Assembly (NCBI GenBank): GCA_965637545.1 | Contig: OZ281494.1 | Coordinates: 3,410,001 to 3,474,000 of the forward strand | Source: Phallusia mammillata | Taxonomy: Eukaryota | DNA: 64,000 bases | Reading direction: 5' to 3' | Part shown: piece after piece, positions 224-35,741 of the stretch | How positions within the stretch are numbered: position 1 is the stretch's first letter | How the letters are laid out: the number at the start of each line of letters is the position of its first letter | Notes under the pieces: generated by a model | Seen by the model: the letters and a program-made list of their open reading frames with translations, nothing else | Database searches by the model: none | Told to the model about the DNA's origin: nothing | Translations under genes and position numbers: made by a program

Positions 224-950
224 GTTTGAAGACTATTTTCCTGCCCAAGCTTGAGTTGGTTAAAGAGTTCTCTACCTCTCATCGCAAGGCGAACTTTCCT
301 ATTCTTGTGATCAAACCGAACGATCAGATATTCAATCTGTTTGATATAGTTGCATTTAAGTCATGCCAATAACACAGTGAAGCATGCCGACGTGCACACA
401 TACAAGATAGTAAATTATTAAACCGACTGGGAGATGGAATCAAAAAGGTGGAAGTGCAGCACTACTTCAATGGTGACGCAATCCCAAATCCTCTACACAT
501 TCTATGCAACACAATGTTCGAACCAGTGCTTGTTAAGGTAAAGGGTTTCTTAACCAAACAATCAAAGCCAGGACCATCAGATATGATGGCAAAAGTAGGG
601 TTGCGTAAACCAACCGACGAAAAAATTTCAGTTGCGATGAAAAAGTTTTTTTCTAGTCATGGCAACTGAACACACTTTAGCCTTGCGAATTTCTAACCCC
701 ATGAAATAGCCCAATGTTCCAATCGAGCGCGCGAGCTTCGTTCTAAGTCACAGGTTTTACATTCATACTTACAAACTTACAACCATTTCTTTGTTACCTC
801 GTCTCCCCACTTGAGAGGTTCGTTTTTGCGCATTTTATGATCTTTATAAGTTCGAATACAATGGCTGATTCCGTTCATCTTTACGTCATCGGCAAACTGC
901 TGAATTTCAGACCAAGTAAGAGGCTTCTCTTTAAAAGCTTGGGGCGCCAT
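224..950 (-). CDS. GCLC: Glutamate-cysteine ligase catalytic subunit-like gene, copy 1: exons 1-2; gene continues off the left edge
   Basis: Exon 1 at 950-798 reads MAPQAFKEKPLTWSEIQQFADDVKMNGISHCIRTYKDHKMRKNEPLKWGDE with a GT donor. Exon 2 at 336-224 reads IEYLIVRFDHKNRKVRLAMRGRELFNQLKLGQ. Both match the eukaryotic GCLC N-terminus (PLSWEE...HGI..F...Y......D.LKWGDEVEYMLV.FDHENKKVRL), with the intron after WGDE. Confidence 0.85.
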
Positions 951-3900
951 TACTATATGTGTTAAAATATCTTTAACCTTTTGCAAATGTACGTAAACTA
1001 TTTAAGCATAATTATCTGTTAGGGCATTACATTCGCACAAAACAGTTCGACAAACTTCTACACAAACGAAAGGCCCCAAACATTTCATTCCAACTGAAAC
1101 GCAAACCCGAATCAGTAGGCCTACTAGAACTCTAGTGCGTACATTCACAAATGTGGCGAAATTTACATGGTGTTATGGCAAAACAGACAATAAAAAAAAC
1201 TCTTGTGACATAGCTATTTAAATTCAGCTTTTAAAGACGCCAAGCAGGCCTTAGCTAAAGCAACTCTGCTGCACCACCTGTTACCGCATGCTCCAACTGC
1301 CCTCACCAACGATGCATCGAAAAATTCTGCTGGCGCTGCAAATCAGATTCCTTCACGAAATGCGATCACTTTTTATTCTGTACGCCGTATGTTTTGCCGG
1401 CAGGATATCGGTTTTCTCGGATTGTGACAAAAACGTTTAGGCTTGCCGTTGTTAAAAATAACCAGAAACATGCATTTCAAAAATGGATAATTTTATTCAA
1501 AAAAGAAAATAGATTAACTTTTATTCGCATGTATTCCCTTTTTGAGTGTAAAAAGAAACCTACGACGCCAGCGAGGGGATGGCATATTAACGCTTCGCCT
1601 TAGCTGCGTCGGAGCAGATGTTTTATGTTCAGTGTTGGGATTGGTTGTATTGAGACTGAAACCTAGTGTTCAGTCTTATGTTGAAGCCCCGTGTTTGTAT
1701 AATCTATAATGTGTTGTTGATATTTAGGGTAGTCGTCATATAATGTGTGTAATCAGGTAGTCCACCATTTCTGCCCCGTGTGTTAAATGGTATCTCATTT
1801 AATAAAATAAGATGGTGGTGTAAGGGGTTGTATGCATTTAGAGGTATTGCCCTGCTAAATAGTTTAACTCTAATTTAAACTGAAATTAGCAAACAATAAT
1901 CCATAAGCGTAAGAGTGAATTCACGCTTGACAAAGTATAAATTGTCGGTTAATCTTTGTTAACATCAAATTGTATTTTAATTTGTGACGTCAGTTTGGAC
2001 ATGAGATAGATATTACAGTCTTAATAAGAGTCTGGGCTATTTCTGCATGCGTTCGAATGAACGTTGTTGTGCATGCAAACAATACTCTTACTGGAATGGA
2101 ATGACCCGGTTTTGGCCAAAGTCACCGAAGTAAAAGCAACAGGCTGTCTAGTTTATAACTATCCTATACACTTTTTGCAGCCATTAGGAACCCTGGCTTA
2201 CTATATACACTGCCCACGTGGCATTGGACAAAGCTTCTACTTTCAGGAATCAAACGCATTTACTTCGACAATTTGAATTTAATTAAACCAAATTCAGTAA
2301 CACTTCTATACGGCCCTATGCTGAAATTACGGCAAACTTAGAACCTTATTTCTATGCGTGTTTGGAAAGTAATAAATATTCGACGTCAAATCTGATGACA
2401 CGTCAATAAAAAGTCGTACGTCATCGATTCGGAAACTATTGAATCGCGTTTGTAGTCTTTGTGTGACGTTATAAAGTTCCGAATCTTCTGTGCCGTACTG
2501 ACATGCTGCAAACTTTATATGGTTTCTGAAATAAAACATTTCTGTCAAAACGGCGTTGTTTTGTTGAGCTCTTCTCATTTTCTCATCAATCTGTAAAAAG
2601 TAAACTTCATCACTGCAGTTGTTATATCAAACCAATAATAGTTTAAACAATATTCCCAACATAATATGTAATCATAATAGCTGGACGTTTAGTCGGTTTT
2701 GAGTTTGCCTATTCGTCCAAACTTTGTTGGTGTAATAACGTCGACGTTCACCAAAGTGATTGTTGAAACTTTTACTTGCTTTTGATCAAAAAAACAATTT
2801 CAGCTTTGACTGATACATTTACAATTGACTATTGAACGCAGTGGTCCAATTTGAATCGAATTATGTTTTTAAAAAGACTCGTTTTGACCCGAGTCCTGCC
2901 TTAAAAAGACACGTTTAGTATATATATCCTTACCACCGGTATAGGAACCAGAATATCGAGTTTATTGGCCAGAATTACTCTGCTGAGAAGTATGACGAAG
3001 ACAACAAAAGCCGCATTCTTAAAGTCGCTCAATTGAGCTTCCATTATCCTGAACTCGACTCTCCATCCAATATCACTACTGTCTGGAGGAGGAGGCTTGA
3101 AACGAACCGTTTGCCAGTTGGTCGACTGAATGTTCTGAAAGTAGTTGAAGGTTTGAAAAACTATTTTGTTACATATCAATGTTAGAAAAATTGTGATTAT
3201 GGATTTTCTGAGATATATGTAACATCCAAAACCCGACTTAAAAGCAACATGCTTCACACCCGTTTGTGTACATATTAATTCACTGCAACATTACGTTCCT
3301 GCTTTGCACATTTAATACCCATCTTTTTATGACACCGAAGTTTATACAAACGGGTATGACTGATGTAGCCTTATATCACTGATAGTGACATAAACATTTG
3401 CCGAAACGTCTGAACATTAAACCATGTTACATTTGATGTTTACTTGGGTCGGTATATGTCGGTACTTATGAACAGTTCCGGGTTTATTCAAAAAATTATC
3501 ATGAAGCTTGATTGAAACAAACTGCCACGTGTCAATAAGTACAGTAAATACAATTTGTTGTAAAAGTCATAGCAATTGCTGTTGTTGTAAATCAGTAACG
3601 ATTTTCTGGCAGTGTTATTAATCGAGTGTCTCAATGATCAAGCAGTGCTTGACAAGCACACACCTCAAAATGCTCGTAACCAAGTTGTGGAGTAAATAAG
3701 AGTTGGCTTCGTTCCAACGAAAGTAGCTTTCTCACCCACAAGTGTGAAAAGTGGCGACTGATTGTGTTTTCCACACCTGATGTAAACAATGCGGTATCAA
3801 AGCTTTGAGGTAACGCGAAGTGAATCTTGATTGCTCACAAAATCAAGACATTGACGATTATAAACACCTTATAAGTTTTCCGCGCCTAATGTACGCATTA

Positions 3901-28528: not shown

Positions 28529-31500
28529 ATGCCGTTTATTTTGAGAGTTTCATTGGTGCGTTTAGTAGCTGGAATGCTCTTTCTTCTGCCAGTTTCGATT
28601 TGGGGTAAGTGGCTTGATTTTTAAAACCTATGATATAAAAGTGCATCTGTAAGTTTCCTAAACTGATAAGTTATAACTTATTTAGCGTTTGCACAAACAT
28701 TGTAAAGTAAATCGGTTTAGAAACAATTTAGAAAAACATAGTCAAAAATGTTTAAAAAATCTGAAGAAATGGTGATTATTACTTTGTCGTAATTTTCAGG
28801 TTTTTATTTTTCAGCTCAAGTACCTCTTTTGACCGGCTGTCTGGGGGAAATAAACAACACCCGATGCATCGGTAAAAATTATGTTACAAGAAACTAGAAT
28901 GAATTTAGCTGTTTTATAGAGAAATATACAAACTTTTTGATTTTTAAATTAGTTTGTGAAGGAAATTGGTTGTTTATCCCCTGCCCTGATGGAACAGTTA
29001 TTGACATAAAATCAGCTCTTTATGGTCATGAATTTCCTTACGCAGGGTAAGTAAATTTAACATCGTGGATTTCATAGATTTTTTTTTCTCAAACGATCCA
29101 ATTATGATATAAACAGATAAATTTTGAAATTGTGAGCTGCAACTTTTAGTTTTTATAATGTATAAAAACATTTTTTTGTACTACAGTTGCCGAACGGCTT
29201 TAAAGTTAAGCAAGTTTTAACATAGCTTTTGGAATGAAATATTGAGATTTATTGGGTGTTTTATTCATACAAAAAGTATTATTTACAAAATTGCATTTTG
29301 TTTTCACTATTGGTTTGTAAAGTTTTGCAAATATTTAATCTCTACATTTTTTGGATAAGGGTGTTGCTCACGGTCAACGACAAAGAAGATGTTTAAACCA
29401 ACTTGTATTCAGTCAGTATTAAATCCGAAATTCTGTACTCGTAGCGACTTTGCAAACTATCATTTTGGTCTGAACAATCGTACTTTGCGTTTACTTTGAC
29501 TCGGTAAATCCAATTCAAAATGATATGTTGTGTTTAAAGAGTGTGCAGGATGACTTCCCCTACGGCCCAATGCAATGGAACTGATGGAGTAACAGAGATA
29601 CTTAGGAAGTGTCAACAAAAACCTCGGTGCGTAATTATTCAATCAGCCATTCCTGGTGACCCATGTTCTGGTTTCGTCAAATACATAGACATCAACATGA
29701 CATGCTCCTTTCCCAGAGGTTGGTTTTAATATCAATATTGCGCGGCATCACACCAATTAACACCCGTAATATTACCATCAAACGCAACATGTATAACAGA
29801 AAGTAATTCGGTACTTATTTTTCCAAGTTTTCTCGCCATCATGTTACCTTTCACGCTAGGTTTGGTTTGTCGTTTGTTGTTATACACAGCTTAGTATTTG
29901 CAATATTTAGTTTATCGAGAGTACAGGCGAATGGATGCTTTAAGAAGCGTTTTGTTGTTGCAGCTCTATCGTTTATGAAAGACTTAAAAAATGTGAATCC
30001 GGCAAATTCTGAGGCATTAGAAAACGGGGAAGATAGAATTGGAAAGTTTTCCCGAAATCATCTTGATACCAGTGGAGTCAACTATACAACCGGAGATGCT
30101 CAACTGCACATCGTGGTTTCCAACATCAGTCAGGAAGCATTTAACTCATTCCTTCAGTTAGAGTCATCTCACATTGACTTTACACTGCAAACAAACAGCA
30201 CCAATCGTACAGTGAGTGCAGTTCTAACCTTTAAAATAAGCAAGACAGAAGCTGCAGAAACCATGTTCAACAACGCCAGTTTTCTCTCCGCCAAAACGCG
30301 CTACATAAGCACCCAGAATACAAGCTTCTTCGTTATTGTTGGCTGGGACGACAATGACAACCGGTTGCCTGGGAACGCGAGCATCATTGTCAATTCTACG
30401 TCACCGAAATCGGTCTGCGAGAAGATCAAAGAAGAAAAGAAGAACACAAGCAATCTGATGGTCAAAAAACTAGAACCGAAATGTTTGTTTCTAGACATGG
30501 TGACAAAAACGTACTCGGACAAGGGTTGTGTCACAATCACTGATGACGTAACAAGCAGAGTCACGTGCAAATGCAGTCATCTTACCATTTTCACTGTTCT
30601 GCTGGCTGTGGAAACCACCGTTATACCGGAAACTTTGAAGGTAGGCAAAACACAAGTGTGCTTGATACAGACTTGAATTGAGCTTATTTCGCTTGGTGAA
30701 AGACAACATAGACAACAAATGTGGCGGGTACGAATGGTTGATAATGGCTGAACGCGCCGGAGGCTGCAGCTACACTGTTTTGGGGCCTTGTAAGCCGATA
30801 TATGCATGATGGGAGTTTGGGCGCCAGTTCAACTCAGTCTTAGGAATTAAAGACCAAATTTGAGCTCTAATTCAAAAGGGCTTCGACTTAAAGTAAAGCG
30901 GTCAATTAAAACACATGTCTACCTGACTTCCACATTATCAAGTCAACCAGTTCAGGCCTAAATAGCCCTTTCATAAGATGGTTGCAAACTTGTTTTTTTC
31001 CTAAATTCCCACTATTATTCTATTTTCAGATCATATCATACACAACTGAATCCATCTCTGTCGTGTTTCTGGTGGCTACCATAGTGATTCTCTTTAAATA
31101 CGGACGGGGCGATGACAGGACTCCAGTTCAAATCAACTTGTCAGTGGCTCTTCTGCTTCTTCACGCCATCAACTTGACCCATGACGTTGCTGTTTTGCAT
31201 ACAACTGTGTGTGAGGTTTTCACAGTAACCCTTCATTTCATCTTACTGTCTGTAGGTAAGCTGTCAACCAGCTGATTTACTATCTGATCTAGATCATTCA
31301 AGGGTAAGCAAACTATTAAAAAGTAAAATTAATCTCGGTTGCTCCCTTAGAAATAATTTCTGGATCCGCCCTTGCTATACTTACATTACAACCTGCCATC
31401 TTCGTGAAGAAAAACTTTTGTTGTTGTTGTGTTTAGGAATGTGGTTTCTGATTGAAGGAGTCCGCCTCCTAATGGCAACTTCTTTTCCATATTCTTTTGA

Positions 31501-34500
31501 GGCTCAAGATCCGAAAACTCGACTTAAGATTTTCGTTTTCATTGGTTGGATTGTTCCTGCTCTTATAGTGGGACCAGCCGGGGGTGTCGGTTTTTTCCTT
31601 GACATCTACATGAAGCCCCAACCCTTATATGAAAAATGCCACAACCACCAAAATCAATCTTCACCGATTCCAAAGTATGACAGATGCTGGTTGGCTCCCG
31701 GTACTCCGGTCTTCTACTCCACGGTCGTCGCTCCTCTTGCTCTCGTCCTCCTTATCAACTTCATGATCATGCTGAAGACGACACACGTATTGTTCAAAAC
31801 GAGAAAAATGCAGAGCAGAGATGAAAATGATACCGTGATGATTGCTATGAAAGGAGCCAAGTCCTTCTTCCTCTTGCTCCTGATGCTCGGAGGAACATGG
31901 GGTCTAGCATTCTTCACAGGTTGGTCGATTGAGACAATTTAAAATGTAGAGTGGTTGTATTCAACCAGTGTGTATGGAAAATCATTCATAAAATGCACAT
32001 AGTTAATAATATTTAGGTTATAACTTTATCTGTTTATGCTTTTTTTATGTTTTTCATGGTTGCTATGTTTGAAGCTTGTTTAAACCAGGATTGCGGCATA
32101 ACAGGTTTATTATTATTATTATTATAGTTTCCCACGCTCTTGGGCGCATTGGGCAGCAAGATTGTTCCACTTTTTTCTGTCTTTTGCAATTTCCTCTATC
32201 TCCTTTATGTTTAACCCTCTCATTTCTAGATCTTTGCGGAAAGTCTCCCTCCAGGTAAGCTTTGGTCTACCTCTTTTTCTTTTCCCTTGCGGTGTCCAGC
32301 TCATAGCGATTTTTGGAGCCCGTTCGTCTGACATGCGTAACACATGCCCTGCAAGTCTAAATCTCCGCGTCGACATGATGGTGCATAAAGGCTTGGTACC
32401 ACTAATTTGGTACACCTCATCATTTGTAATGTGGTCCTTGTATGTGATATTTAGGATCCTTCGAAGACAACGCTGATGGAAAGCGTTTATGTGCTTTTTC
32501 AGCTTGACTGTCATTTTCCAGGTTTCACTGGCATATAGAACGGTGGGCATTACAATTGACTGGTACAGTTTGATCTTTACCAGTTTCGAAACCTTCGAGC
32601 TTGACCAAACTGTTTTGAGCCTTCTGAAGGCCGAAGCAGCTTTTCCGATGCGGGCATTTATGTCGGCCTCCACATCAGCATCTGTTGTGAACACACTGCC
32701 AAGATAGGTAAAGCTTGTGATGTTGTTAATAGGCTCAATTCCATTGATGGTTAAATGTACGTTGGACTGAGTTTCCCCTCCAACTCGAAGTAACTTAGTC
32801 TTGTCGCTGTTGATCGTCAGACCGGCTGTTGCTGCATTTTTGGCCAATGAGTTGGTCATTTCTTGAAGATCTGTCATCGACTCTGCGAGCAAGGCGATGT
32901 CATCTGCAAAGTCGAGATCCGTAAGACGCTTGTGGTTTGTCCATGAGATGCCGAACTTTGGATAATTCATTGCCTTTCTCATCACATAGTCGATAGTGGT
33001 AATGAATAGTAGGGGTGATAAGACACAGCCTTGGCGCACACCTGTGTTGATTCTAAAGAACTCTGTGTTTCCTGACTGAACTTTTACGCAGCAGCTTGAT
33101 CCTTCGTAGATGTTTTTGAAGGTATCTATAAACCTGAGTGGAACACCGTATTTTTGTAACACCTGCCATACAGTGTTGCGATGCACACTATCAAATGCCT
33201 TCCTGAAGTCAATGAAGTTGACAAACAGGGGTTTCTGAAATGCAAGGCACTGCTCCACAATGTTTCTGAGAACAAAGATCTGGTCACAGCACGACCTGTT
33301 GTATCGAAAGCCTGCCTGTTCTTCTCTCAACTTCTCATCTAAGGATGTCTTTAATCTGTGCAGAAGCACGCAGCAGAACACTTTCCCTGGAACAGATAGC
33401 AGTGTGATTCCTCGCCAATTACCACAAATGCCTAGATTTCCCTTTTTTGGAAGTTTCACAATTACTCCTTTTTTCCAATCAGATGGTACAGTCTGCATTT
33501 TCCAACATAAGTTGCATAGCTTTGTCAACTGTGCAATCAGTGCATTCCCTCCATTTTTTAGCATCTCAGCAGAAATTTGGTCGAGACCTGCAGCTTTGTT
33601 GTTTTTGAGTTTTTTCAGTGCACTGGAAATTTCTTCTGTTGTGATGTCACCCATATCTACTTCCATCGTTGGTCCATCTTCATCTTCAAAAGTAGGCAGT
33701 TCGTAAGGTTCTGGTTGGTTCAGAATTTCCTTAAAGTGTTCGTACCATCGCATGTTTTGTTCTTCCTCGGTTAGAAGAGTTTTTCCAGTTTTGTCCTTAA
33801 TTGGTACACCGGAGCTTTTTCCTGTCTTTGTCAGATGCCTAATTATTCCAAATAGCGCTCTAGTGTCATTTCTGTTCATTGCTTTCTGTGCGTCCGCACA
33901 TAGCGTTTCAGTCCAAAACTTTTTGTCGTCTCTACAACTCTTTTTAACAACTTTGTGTGCTTGTTCGTACTGTTTTCCTATCTTCCAGTATTCATCAGAA
34001 GATTTGGCGCTTTCCCTTTCATGTTTAATCTTTCTTCTCTGATCAATCAATGCCCATGTTTGTGGTCGAATCCAGCTTTCCCTTCTCGTCCCGCGCCTTC
34101 TGCCGAGGGTTTGATCTGCAGCTGTTGTCACTATTTTTTGAAATTGTTTCCATTGCTCTTCAATATTATCTTTTACTTGTACAGCCTGGAATCTTGTGCT
34201 CAAATTTTTGTGAAACATTTTTACTATTTTTTGATCTTTTAGTTTTATAAGGTCGTATGGTTTTGTTCCACTGTGTTTGATAATTTTTTTCAGTTTTAGT
34301 TTCAGTGACCCTTTGACGAGGTAGTGATCGGAGGCTACGTCTGCACCTCTGCAGCTACGTACATCCTGCAGTGCGCTGCGCCATCTTCTGCATATGCAAA
34401 TGTAGTCAATTTCACTTGTTGTTTTGCCGTTTGGGGATTTCCAGGTTTGCTTGTGTATTCGTTTGTGATTAAAAAAAGTGTTCCCTATACATAACTCGTT

Positions 34501-35741
34501 TGTACTGCAGATGGTAAGAAGTCTGTGCCCGTTGTTGTTAGTTTTGCTTGCTACACCGAATGGTCCTAAGATGTCACTCCAACCAGCTCTGTTTCCATCA
34601 ATCTGTGCGTTAAAATCGCCCATTAATAATTGTAGATCATGTTTAGGGATACCATTTAATGTATCCTGGAGCTGGTCATAAAACAAATCCTTTTCTGACT
34701 CTTCTGCCTCTTCTGTAGGGGCATACACCTGAACAATAGATGTTTTCCCATGGCGCGAGTGAAAACGTGCAGTAATTATTCGATCACTGATTGGTTTCCA
34801 TCCAACCAATGCCTGATTTGCTTCATGGTCCAGCACGAACCCAACACCATGTATATGCTGTTTGTTGTGTCCCGAAAAGACAACTGTCTTTCCCTCGCTA
34901 GTCAGTTTGCCACTTCCAATCCATCTCATTTCACTAACACCGAGAATATTTAATCCGTAGGTGTGAAACTCGCGCAATACTTGCGCCAATTTTCCACATT
35001 GGAACAAAGTTCTTACATTCCAGGTTGCTAGTTTTGTAATTGTTGTAGCAGAGAATATGTTGCTCTTCATCGGGACCAGAGCTTCCCTGGGGCTTTCACC
35101 CTGGCCCGTCATGAATGATTGGGTCGAACACACATTCCTGCCACTGCTTAAAGTAGTAACTCTTCTTGCTGTTTCTGTAGCGGTAAATTGTTTTACGGGG
35201 TCGGGTTGCTGGCCCGACGCCCAACCCTCCTTCTTTTTCAGCCGGGCTTGGGACCGTCCTTGGCGAAGTTCATTCATAAAATGCACATAGTTAATAATAT
35301 TTAGGTTATAACTTTATCTGTTTATGCTTTTTTTATGTTTTTCATGGTTGCTATGTTTGAAGCTTGTTTAAACCAGGATTGCGGCATAACAGGTTTACCA
35401 CTCTATTTTTGTAATGTTGATAATTTACGGTTTTTTCTGTAGTTCGATTTGCAACAATGGGGTTAATGGCTGTGTCAAATTGACGAAAAACACTTGAAAC
35501 CCTCAGATATAAACACATGAGTTCTGTTTTTTGTTTTGCAGGAATTGGGAACGAGATTACGAACGAGGTGTTCATGTACATTCACACCTTGGTGAACGGA
35601 TCGCAAGGAATCGTCGTCTTCCTGCTGTACTGCGTCATGAGTCACATGATAAGACAGGAAATTGTGCCTTGTAAGCGTGAAGCTGATGGGTCTGAGCAGC
35701 AGAACAACACAGCAAACACTACTGATGGAAACCGACACTAA
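28529..35741 (+). CDS. Adhesion GPCR type B1: signal peptide, SUEL/Gal_lectin domain, GAIN/GPS, 7TM; about 663 aa, intact
   Basis: Exons: 28529-28604, 28815-28871, 28953-29046, 29540-29718, 29964-30640, 31030-31255, 31437-31919, 35542-35741; 1992 nt open. Lectin domain VCEG..PCPDGTVIDIKSALYG...GDPCSGFVKYIDINMTC has 8 Cys. GPS reads CKCSHL/TIFTVLL. An RTE LINE lies in the last intron. Confidence 0.9.
32110..35269 (-). mobile_element. Full-length RTE-clade non-LTR retrotransposon with 128-bp TSD
   Basis: Single APE+RT ORF, (TAA)n tail, and a twister motif at the 5' end. Identical 128-bp direct repeats at 31982-32109 and 35270-35397. Empty paralogous site in B2 at about 49390-49517. Confidence 0.95.
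32122..35112 (-). CDS. RTE ORF: apurinic endonuclease + reverse transcriptase, about 996 aa from the likely ATG (MTGQGES...)
   Basis: Motifs ATWNVRT, GVSEMRW, YAPT, GDFNA and SDH (endonuclease); WRGITLL, QAGFR, DFRKAFDSV, GVRQGCVLSP and FADD (RT); C-terminal KRKRGRPK. No stops. The tracked ORF start at 35286 lies in the TSD and is not the element's own start. Confidence 0.95.
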   Translation of the reverse strand: MTGQGESPREALVPMKSNIFSATTITKLATWNVRTLFQCGKLAQVLREFHTYGLNILGVSEMRWIGSGKLTSEGKTVVFSGHNKQHIHGVGFVLDHEANQALVGWKPISDRIITARFHSRHGKTSIVQVYAPTEEAEESEKDLFYDQLQDTLNGIPKHDLQLLMGDFNAQIDGNRAGWSDILGPFGVASKTNNNGHRLLTICSTNELCIGNTFFNHKRIHKQTWKSPNGKTTSEIDYICICRRWRSALQDVRSCRGADVASDHYLVKGSLKLKLKKIIKHSGTKPYDLIKLKDQKIVKMFHKNLSTRFQAVQVKDNIEEQWKQFQKIVTTAADQTLGRRRGTRRESWIRPQTWALIDQRRKIKHERESAKSSDEYWKIGKQYEQAHKVVKKSCRDDKKFWTETLCADAQKAMNRNDTRALFGIIRHLTKTGKSSGVPIKDKTGKTLLTEEEQNMRWYEHFKEILNQPEPYELPTFEDEDGPTMEVDMGDITTEEISSALKKLKNNKAAGLDQISAEMLKNGGNALIAQLTKLCNLCWKMQTVPSDWKKGVIVKLPKKGNLGICGNWRGITLLSVPGKVFCCVLLHRLKTSLDEKLREEQAGFRYNRSCCDQIFVLRNIVEQCLAFQKPLFVNFIDFRKAFDSVHRNTVWQVLQKYGVPLRFIDTFKNIYEGSSCCVKVQSGNTEFFRINTGVRQGCVLSPLLFITTIDYVMRKAMNYPKFGISWTNHKRLTDLDFADDIALLAESMTDLQEMTNSLAKNAATAGLTINSDKTKLLRVGGETQSNVHLTINGIEPINNITSFTYLGSVFTTDADVEADINARIGKAASAFRRLKTVWSSSKVSKLVKIKLYQSIVMPTVLYASETWKMTVKLKKHINAFHQRCLRRILNITYKDHITNDEVYQISGTKPLCTIMSTRRFRLAGHVLRMSDERAPKIAMSWTPQGKRKRGRPKLTWRETFRKDLEMRGLNIKEIEEIAKDRKKWNNLAAQCAQERGKL
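35220..35270 (-). ncRNA. Twister ribozyme motif (3' cleavage product) at the RTE 5' end
   Basis: Minus strand reads AA-CTTC-GCC-AAGGA-CGG-TCCC-AAGC-CCG-GCTGAAAAA-GAAG-GAGGG-TTGGG. This matches the twister layout AA-P2-GCC...CGG UCCC AAGC CCG..AAA-P2'-GAGGG-P1', with P2 formed by CTTC/GAAG. Confidence 0.85.

What the first reader, a model, noticed from the sequence alone, without database searches (positions are those of the whole stretch)
35200..35270. RTE retrotransposon begins at a twister ribozyme cleavage site
Seen: the first bases of the element are AACTTCGCC, followed by a full twister scaffold (P2 CTTC/GAAG, P4 CGG/CCG, loop TCCCAAGC, GAGGG pseudoknot partner, P1 3' strand TTGGG) and then a hairpin GTCGGG/CCCGAC. 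The first A is shared with the TSD. The U at the cleavage site and the 5' P1 strand are absent and replaced by host DNA (TGAATG). Known: twister cleaves at U/A of UAA, and twister motifs have been reported at the 5' ends of Schistosoma RTE (Perere-3) elements. Inference: the parent transcript was processed by self-cleavage and fully reverse-transcribed. I know of no such report for this kind of host. The new flank pairs poorly with TTGGG, so this daughter copy may be unable to self-cleave, meaning the insertion site would decide which copies can propagate.
Basis: partly seen in the sequence, partly recalled or inferred. Interest (0 to 1): 0.85.

Follow-up and report, generated by a model that had tools for sequence, protein, structure and literature searches.

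The report
Twister ribozyme heads a sea-squirt RTE
A recently active jumping gene (RTE retrotransposon) in the sea squirt Phallusia starts exactly at the cut site of a self-cutting RNA (twister ribozyme), an arrangement already published for a blood fluke and here extended to a chordate and a snail.

Summary
On the minus strand, 35270..32110 is a full-length RTE element. It has an intact APE+RT ORF, a (TAA)6 tail and a perfect 124-128 bp target-site duplication. A public DNA run holds the empty site, so the insertion is polymorphic.

Its first 51 nt form a P3-less twister (Rfam twister-P1, 35.8 bits, E 1.8e-5, below the gathering score). Ten genomic copies start at the same AACTTCGCC next to unrelated flanks. 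TSDs place the boundary at the predicted scissile bond.

Relatives with twisters in the same place occur in Littorina and in unnamed marine samples. P2 and P4 show compensatory changes across them.

This is not new in kind. Liu et al. 2021 described it, including the TSD-as-P1 idea, for Schistosoma Perere-3. De la Peña 2020 noted truncated twisters in the RTE superfamily. I found no tunicate report.

- P1 is reported as dispensable.
- Flank pairing with UUGGG is at chance level.
- The GGG of the supposed P1 3' strand covaries with a downstream CCC as the base of a conserved hairpin.

The scan noted the same thing on another piece of this genome (s1-361582).

The parts
32110..35270 (-). Full-length RTE-type non-LTR retrotransposon, 3161 nt
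   Evidence: Boundaries are set by the TSD. Four other full-length copies are 99.4-99.9% identical.
35220..35270 (-). P3-less, P1-less twister ribozyme: AA / P2 CUUC / GCC / AAGGA / P4 CGG / UCCCAAGC / CCG / GCUGAAAAA / P2' GAAG / GAGGG / UUGGG. The predicted scissile bond is between 35271 and 35270.
   Evidence: Rfam RF03160 35.8 bits, E 1.8e-5. Across relatives P2 is 92.9% paired with 3 of 4 pairs compensatory, P4 is 100% paired with 1 compensatory pair, and T1 is invariant.
35197..35222 (-). Conserved stem-loop SL-A: GGG-C-GUCGGG [CCAGCAA] CCCGAC-CCC. Its first three G are the 'P1 3' strand' of the Rfam and reader model.
   Evidence: In 14 relatives 94.4% of cells are paired and 6 of 9 pairs have changes on both sides: 27 such cells against 7.0+-2.1 in shuffles (0/500). 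Slid controls reach 60% or less. The MFE fold gives the same stem.
32122..35112 (-). Intact ORF of 996 aa encoding an AP endonuclease and a reverse transcriptase
   Evidence: Pfam RVT_1 7.4e-35 and Exo_endo_phos 1.5e-7. A UniRef Phallusia mammillata protein is 98% identical. The ATGACGG start is conserved in relatives.
35070..35111 (-). Hairpin at the start codon: UGAC + 9-bp stem + GAAAGCC..GGAAG + stem + CGA
   Evidence: RNAalifold on 9 relatives finds 8 of 11 pairs with compensatory changes. Weak Rfam SECIS_1 hits fall at the same place in the window, L036, L041 and L042.
32110..32124 (-). (TAA)n 3' tail. The stop codon is its first unit, so there is no separate 3' UTR.
   Evidence: Sequence and boundary.
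35270..35397 (.). 5' copy of the target-site duplication, 124-128 bp. The end bases are shared with the element's A and with the TAA tail.
   Evidence: Exact 128-nt match to 31982-32109.
31982..32109 (.). 3' copy of the target-site duplication
   Evidence: In run X11 one contig joins 35589..35270 directly to the sequence right of 31982, which is the empty site.

Best explanation
This is a young, probably still active RTE retrotransposon of Phallusia mammillata whose RNA begins with a twister ribozyme.

Proposed cycle:
1. Transcripts that start upstream, from read-through or a nearby promoter, are cut by the ribozyme between N-1 and the first A of AACUUC.
2. The 5'-OH RNA that begins at AAC is translated, probably with help from the structured leader (SL-A and the start-codon hairpin).
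3. That RNA is copied to its last base by target-primed reverse transcription.
4. The cDNA end is joined to the target, often through A/AA microhomology.

Each new copy therefore keeps the whole catalytic part of the ribozyme and loses everything upstream of the cut. The ribozyme works without a flank-derived P1. The nucleotides usually drawn as the P1 3' strand form the base of a conserved downstream hairpin, so all the required structure lies 3' of the cut. This resembles the HDV-like ribozymes of R2 and other LINEs.

Shown here: the anatomy, the copy termini, the TSDs, the polymorphism and the covariation. Inferred: cleavage in vivo, the translation role of the leader, and SL-A as a stand-in for P1.
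For: Twister identity:
- Twister match with every conserved loop nucleotide.
- P2 and P4 show compensatory changes across relatives from a snail and from unnamed marine samples.
- All 11 twister hits in the 240-Mb genome are 5' ends of this family.

Termini:
- Ten copies start at AACTTCGCC (nine read directly, a tenth).
- TSDs of 8-13 bp abut that base. L026 and L031 show that both A's belong to the element.
- The same rule holds in Littorina L043 (12-bp TSD) and in L039 (9-bp TSD).

Recent activity:
- Five full-length copies are 99.4-99.9% identical.
- 16 of about 40 3' ends are 99-100% identical to this copy.
- An empty-site allele is present in run X11.

No flank-derived P1:
- Flank pairing with UUGGG averages 2.27 of 5 against 2.51 at random, and 58% of cells are paired across relatives.
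- SL-A covariation includes the GGG.

Literature:
- The same arrangement, with in vitro and in vivo cleavage, in Perere-3 (PMC8501958).
- P1 is dispensable (PMC5408937).
Against: - No cleavage assay and no mapped RNA 5' end were available.
- The public runs were only available as contigs, and their RNA label is a guess. One contig of run X1 ends at 35268 with no flank coverage, which is compatible but weak.
- The Rfam score is below the gathering threshold.
- Liu et al. found that P1 composition changes rates in two-strand constructs, so the flank may still modulate efficiency.
- This copy lies antisense in an intron of an adhesion GPCR gene, so host read-through cannot supply its sense transcript.
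Confidence: 0.85

Rival explanations
1. The reader's model, also Liu et al.'s Figure 5D: the ribozyme needs a P1 helix made with the new 5' flank. Most daughters, this one included, would then be cleavage-dead, and only copies landing next to a complementary flank could propagate.
For: - P1 is phylogenetically conserved in canonical twisters.
- In Schistosoma, T-variants with different P1 strands cleave at different rates (PMC8501958).
- One copy, L027, has a flank that could make five pairs with UUGGG, four of them wobble.
Against: - A mini-twister without P1 cleaves at near wild-type rate (PMC5408937).
- The five young, near-identical full-length copies have unrelated flanks with chance-level complementarity.
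- The GGG of UUGGG covaries with the downstream CCC in 14 relatives, including lineages without a twister.
Confidence: 0.12
2. The 5' end is set by something else, such as a transcription start at AAC or template-end effects, and the twister is an inactive relic that merely sits there.
For: No direct cleavage data exist for this element. The Rfam score is below the gathering threshold.
Against: - The core nucleotides are conserved from tunicate to snail, with compensatory P2 and P4 changes.
- The DNA terminus matches the scissile bond to the base in three hosts.
- Old copies show core decay (L030, L047), while all young ones are intact.
Confidence: 0.03

Closest known systems
Twister variants (T-variants) at the 5' end of Perere-3 RTE elements of Schistosoma mansoni (Liu et al. 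2021, PMC8501958)
   Same: - The twister sits directly upstream of a single APE+RT ORF.
- The TSD abuts the AA of the cleavage site.
- The 3' tail is a short tandem repeat.
- L1' GAGGG and the following UUGG are shared.
- The twister-to-AUG distance is 107 nt here, against about 112 or 147 nt there.
   Different: - The host is a tunicate.
- P3 is absent here (5-nt linker), whereas the Schistosoma examples carry a P3 stem.
- P2 is CUUC/GAAG instead of CUCC/GGAG.
- The family has few copies, about 11 5' ends against hundreds.
- No cleavage assay was done here.
- Here the UUGGG segment is shown to be part of a downstream hairpin. I could not check whether that also holds for Perere-3.
HDV-like ribozymes at the 5' ends of R2, RTE, Baggins and L1Tc elements (reviewed in PMC6765202)
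   Same: A 5'-terminal self-cleaving ribozyme frees the element RNA from upstream transcript. Its structure lies entirely downstream of the cut, so it is inherited intact.
   Different: A different ribozyme class and fold. Sister RTE lineages in amphioxus and a loach carry another, unidentified 5' module instead of the twister.
Mini-twister lacking P1 (Kosutic et al. 2015, as reviewed in PMC5408937)
   Same: There is no P1, and only a single nucleotide upstream of the scissile bond is needed.
   Different: That is an engineered construct. Here the P1-less state is the natural, inherited form and is followed by a conserved hairpin.

Membership tests
Twister ribozyme, type P1 (Rfam RF03160) | Conserved loop nucleotides: AA at the cut, GCC, UCCCAAGC, GAGGG | tested here: met
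   All are present at 35270-35225. They are invariant in 7 relatives apart from single changes.
Twister ribozyme, type P1 (Rfam RF03160) | P2 and P4 helices | tested here: met
   P2 is 92.9% paired with 3 of 4 pairs changed on both sides. P4 is 100% paired with 1 compensatory pair.
Twister ribozyme, type P1 (Rfam RF03160) | Pseudoknots T1 (CCC with GGG) and T2 (GC with GC) | tested here: met
   Complementarity is present and invariant. T1 is paired in 7 of 7 sequences and the tested T2 pair in 6 of 7. With no variation, there is no covariation evidence.
Twister ribozyme, type P1 (Rfam RF03160) | P1 helix closing the motif | tested here: not met
   The 5' strand is host DNA. Pairing is at chance in 11 copies and 58% across relatives. 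The literature reports P1 as dispensable (PMC5408937).
Twister ribozyme, type P1 (Rfam RF03160) | Score above the Rfam gathering threshold | tested here: not met
   35.8 bits against 67.2. Relatives score 40.8-59 bits.
Twister ribozyme, type P1 (Rfam RF03160) | Self-cleavage 5' of the first A | not testable with these tools
   The only evidence is indirect: DNA termini and TSDs at that bond.
RTE clade of non-LTR retrotransposons | A single ORF of about 1000 aa with an N-terminal AP endonuclease and a reverse transcriptase | tested here: met
RTE clade of non-LTR retrotransposons | Very short 3' end finishing in a simple repeat with no poly(A), plus TSDs | tested here: met
   The (TAA)6 tail starts at the stop codon. 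TSDs are found in 9 copies.
RTE clade of non-LTR retrotransposons | Phylogenetic placement of the RT within RTE | tested here: inconclusive
   No tree was built. The best named hits are 'craniofacial development protein 2-like' and unnamed RT proteins. The RTE assignment rests on architecture.
Perere-3-type twister-RTE arrangement (Liu 2021) | Twister at the element's 5' terminus with the TSD abutting the AA | tested here: met
   Also met in Littorina and L039.

The most novel reading that the evidence does not exclude
RTE-type twisters are natural P1-less ribozymes. What has been drawn as the P1 3' strand is the base of a conserved downstream hairpin (SL-A) that may take P1's stacking position. 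The whole ribozyme would then lie 3' of its cut and work at any insertion site.

SL-A and a start-codon hairpin would form a shared leader onto which different 5' modules have been swapped between sister RTE lineages: a twister in tunicate, snail and fluke, and another unidentified module in amphioxus and fish.
Probability: 0.4. Interest if true: 0.55.

Novelty: new member of a known kind. Interest (0 to 1): 0.4.

Why it matters
- It extends the twister-RTE partnership from a flatworm to a chordate and a mollusc. This supports the view that the twister is an old, inherited 5'-processing device of part of the RTE clade and not a Schistosoma oddity.
- It offers a small, young and polymorphic family in which the process can be studied.
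- The covariation data argue against the published idea that the target site supplies a needed P1 strand. That changes how the activity of individual copies should be predicted.
- Rfam's gathering score misses these elements, so a model without P1 and P3 would be needed to annotate them.

Tried and rejected
- The reads tools gave only assembled contigs whose RNA label is a guess. They cannot show RNA 5' ends. One X1 contig stops at 35268 and the flank has no depth. I count this as compatible, not as proof.
- The 5' modules of the relatives without a twister (L036 3650-3960, L037 1-200) gave no Rfam match at E up to 10. Hand attempts to fold them as HDV-like ribozymes failed. They remain unidentified.
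- No supplementary files of Liu 2021 are held, so I could not test whether Perere-3 has SL-A.
- A test for enrichment of a flank-derived P1 was negative.
- The mechanical ORF that runs through the twister from GTG 35286 was rejected as coding, because the ATGACGG start at 35112 is the conserved one.
- The minimum-free-energy fold of the first 121 nt is not unusually stable (z = -1.28). A nested-only fold cannot show the pseudoknotted twister, so it is uninformative for that.
- I did not build a tree for the RT.

Full report
**What is there**

On the minus strand, window 35270..32110 is a 3161-nt non-LTR retrotransposon.
- One intact ORF runs from ATG 35112 to the stop at 32124-32122 and encodes 996 aa. 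Pfam finds an AP endonuclease (Exo_endo_phos, 1.5e-7) and a reverse transcriptase (RVT_1, 7.4e-35).
- The stop codon is the first unit of a (TAA)6 tail, so there is no separate 3' UTR.
- The element is flanked by a perfect direct repeat of 128 nt, 35397..35270 and 32109..31982. Its outer bases overlap the TAA tail and the first A of the element, so the target-site duplication is 124-128 bp.
- The best protein hit is a Phallusia mammillata UniRef entry at 98% identity. Earlier notes of the scan also call this genome a sea squirt.
- The element lies antisense in an intron of an adhesion GPCR gene: a GPS exon at 29867-30673 and a 7tm_2 exon at 31418-31939, both on the plus strand.

**The observation**

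The first 51 nt read:

AA-CUUC-GCC-AAGGA-CGG-UCCCAAGC-CCG-GCUGAAAAA-GAAG-GAGGG-UUGGG

- Rfam's twister-P1 model matches 35275..35221 at 35.8 bits, E 1.8e-5 in a 2.5-kb search. All upper-case consensus positions are met. The score is below the 67.2-bit gathering score because P3 is deleted and the four P1 pairs are non-canonical.
- From memory, and not tested here, the same P3-less layout with a 5-nt linker occurs in the rice Osa-1-4 twister.
- Scanning the whole 240-Mb assembly with the model gave 11 hits, and every one is the 5' end of a copy of this family.

**Copies and termini**

The first 200 nt find 12 places in the genome.
- Five are full-length copies, 99.4-99.9% identical.
- One is truncated by 22 nt.
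- Three are internally deleted: element nt 1-110 or 1-123 joined to the last 67-74 nt, or to nt 681-3161.
- Three are older, more diverged copies, two of which align only over the first 660-720 nt.

Nine copies were read directly as starting at AACTTCGCC next to unrelated DNA. A tenth does so in the flank table.

TSDs of 8-13 bp abut that base in the other copies. In L026 and L031 the host base after the TSD is not A, so both A's belong to the element. In five of nine copies the target itself continues with AA, and in the window copy with one A, which indicates microhomology at 5' joining.

The 3' end finds about 40 places, 16 of them 99-100% identical to this copy. So most young copies are 5'-truncated at scattered points, while the full-length ones pile up on one base.

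**Recent activity**

In run X11, which is DNA-like with element depth several times that of the flank, one contig runs from 35589 to 35270 and then straight into TTTTCCATACA.., the sequence that follows the 3' TSD copy. That is the empty site with a single copy of the 128-nt segment. The insertion is therefore polymorphic, and the long TSD arose at insertion.

Runs labelled RNA by guess hold the element:
- One X1 contig ends at 35268 and the flank has no depth.
- X9 holds a contig with the junction of the internally deleted copy.

Contigs cannot show RNA ends, so this is only compatible evidence.

**Relatives**

The ORF has hundreds of relatives at 40-58% identity. I fetched 13 loci. A twister-P1 match lies roughly 100-160 nt upstream of the start codon in seven of them (in L040 the called gene starts inside the twister match):

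| Locus | Source | Rfam bits |
|---|---|---|
| L035 | Tara Oceans metagenome | 50.4 |
| L038 | Tara Oceans metagenome | 48.8 |
| L039 | ENA assembly | 42.4 |
| L040 | ENA assembly | 59.0 |
| L041 | Logan contig | 46.2 |
| L042 | Logan contig | 40.8 |
| L043 | Littorina saxatilis | 42.0 |

- The Littorina twister differs from the Phallusia one at three positions. Two of them are a compensatory U-A to C-G change in P2.
- On an alignment of seven lineages, P2 is 92.9% paired with three of four pairs changed on both sides. P4 is 100% paired with one compensatory pair. T1 is invariant.
- In Littorina (12-bp TSD) and in L039 (9-bp TSD) the TSD again abuts the AA.
- Two amphioxus loci (L036, L044), a loach locus (L045) and two unnamed ones (L037, L046) lack a twister. 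They carry another 130-190-nt 5' module with no Rfam match where tested (L036 and L037).

**P1 and the downstream hairpin**

- In 11 Phallusia copies that pairing averages 2.27 of 5 positions, against 2.51 for random genomic 6-mers.
- Across relatives it is 58% paired, against 93-100% for P2 and P4.

Together they form one stem, GGG-C-GUCGGG [7-nt loop] CCCGAC-CCC (35222..35197), which the MFE fold also predicts.
- On a gapless alignment of 14 relatives, including those without twisters, 94.4% of cells pair.
- Six of nine pairs show changes on both sides: 27 such cells against 7.0+-2.1 in shuffles (0/500).
- Sliding the partner drops pairing to 60% or less.
- The two outer pairs alone show GC, AU, UA, CG, GU and UG.
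- I chose each sequence's register by best pairing. The register nonetheless coincides with invariant landmarks: the bulged C, GG/CC and the following GUAAAA.

A second conserved hairpin encloses codons 2-13 (35107..35073), with 8 of 11 pairs compensatory. It is flanked by the conserved UGAC and GA and gives weak SECIS-like Rfam hits at the same place in four loci.

**Literature**

- Liu et al. 2021 (PMC8501958) report twister variants at the 5' end of Perere-3 RTE elements in S. mansoni. They show in vitro and reporter cleavage that generates a 5'-AA end. TSDs abut the cleavage site. Any base is tolerated at N-1. In their model the TSD forms the P1 5' strand and so links insertion site to activity.
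- De la Peña et al. 2020 (PMC7761336) state that truncated but competent twisters are conserved at the 5' end of the RTE superfamily, citing work in preparation.
- Gebetsberger and Micura 2017 (PMC5408937) report that P1 is dispensable and that a P1-less twister removes a single nucleotide at almost the wild-type rate.
- I found no paper linking twisters with tunicates.

**Verdict**

It is a new host for a published arrangement, not a new kind of system.

The evidence favours a ribozyme that needs nothing upstream beyond one nucleotide. The flank may still tune the rate, and only a cleavage assay can settle that.

The most interesting residue is structural. The 'P1 3' strand' belongs to a conserved downstream hairpin shared with RTE lineages that carry a different 5' module.

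The scan's index holds an unfollowed first-reader note of the same phenomenon on another piece of this genome (s1-361582).

Noticed in passing
window 31982-32109 and 35270-35397: The TSD is unusually long, 124-128 bp and perfect, whereas other copies of the family have 8-13 bp. A public DNA run (X11) holds the empty site, so the insertion is polymorphic.
   Followed up: yes
window 35197-35222 (-): Stem-loop SL-A, with a bulged C and a 7-nt loop, is conserved in 14 RTE relatives and covaries strongly. It includes the GGG usually drawn as the twister P1 3' strand. It is also present in relatives without a twister.
   Followed up: yes
window 35070-35111 (-): A 9-bp hairpin covers codons 2-13 right after the AUG, with 8 of 11 pairs compensatory in 9 relatives. 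It is flanked by the conserved UGAC and GA (SECIS/K-turn-like; Rfam SECIS_1 at 26-27 bits, below threshold). It may serve translation of the uncapped RNA.
   Followed up: partly
L036:3737-3905, L037:1-135, L044:2150-2200, L045:1210-1380, L046:1190-1430: Sister RTE lineages (two amphioxus loci, a loach, two unnamed) keep SL-A and the CUACAGAAACAGCAAG motif but carry another 5' module in place of the twister. Several share GGGG..C.CUCACC .. UAGCAGCU .. AUGGGAG.ACC. There is no Rfam match in the two modules tested (L036, L037). This may be a different ribozyme swapped in at the same position.
   Followed up: partly
L031:608-796, L033:601-773, L032:594-3174 (element orientation): Internally deleted copies keep only the first 110-123 nt (twister, SL-A and part of the leader) and the last 67-74 nt, and they have their own TSDs. 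These ends therefore seem sufficient for mobilisation in trans. A contig in run X9 carries the L032-type junction.
   Followed up: partly
window 32107-32124 (-); L043:5510-5521; L035:3259-3275: In this clade the stop codon is the first unit of the terminal microsatellite: (TAA)n here, (GGTGA)n in Littorina and (TAAC)n in a Tara contig. There is no separate 3' UTR.
   Followed up: no
5' junctions of L024, L025, L027, L032, L033 and the window copy: In five of nine copies the target continues with AA, and in one with A, matching the element's first bases. This is far above the roughly 10% expected and points to microhomology-guided joining of the cDNA end.
   Followed up: partly
window 29867-31939 (+): The element sits antisense in an intron of an adhesion GPCR gene (GPS and 7tm_2 exons). 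Host read-through therefore cannot supply the sense RNA of this copy.
   Followed up: partly
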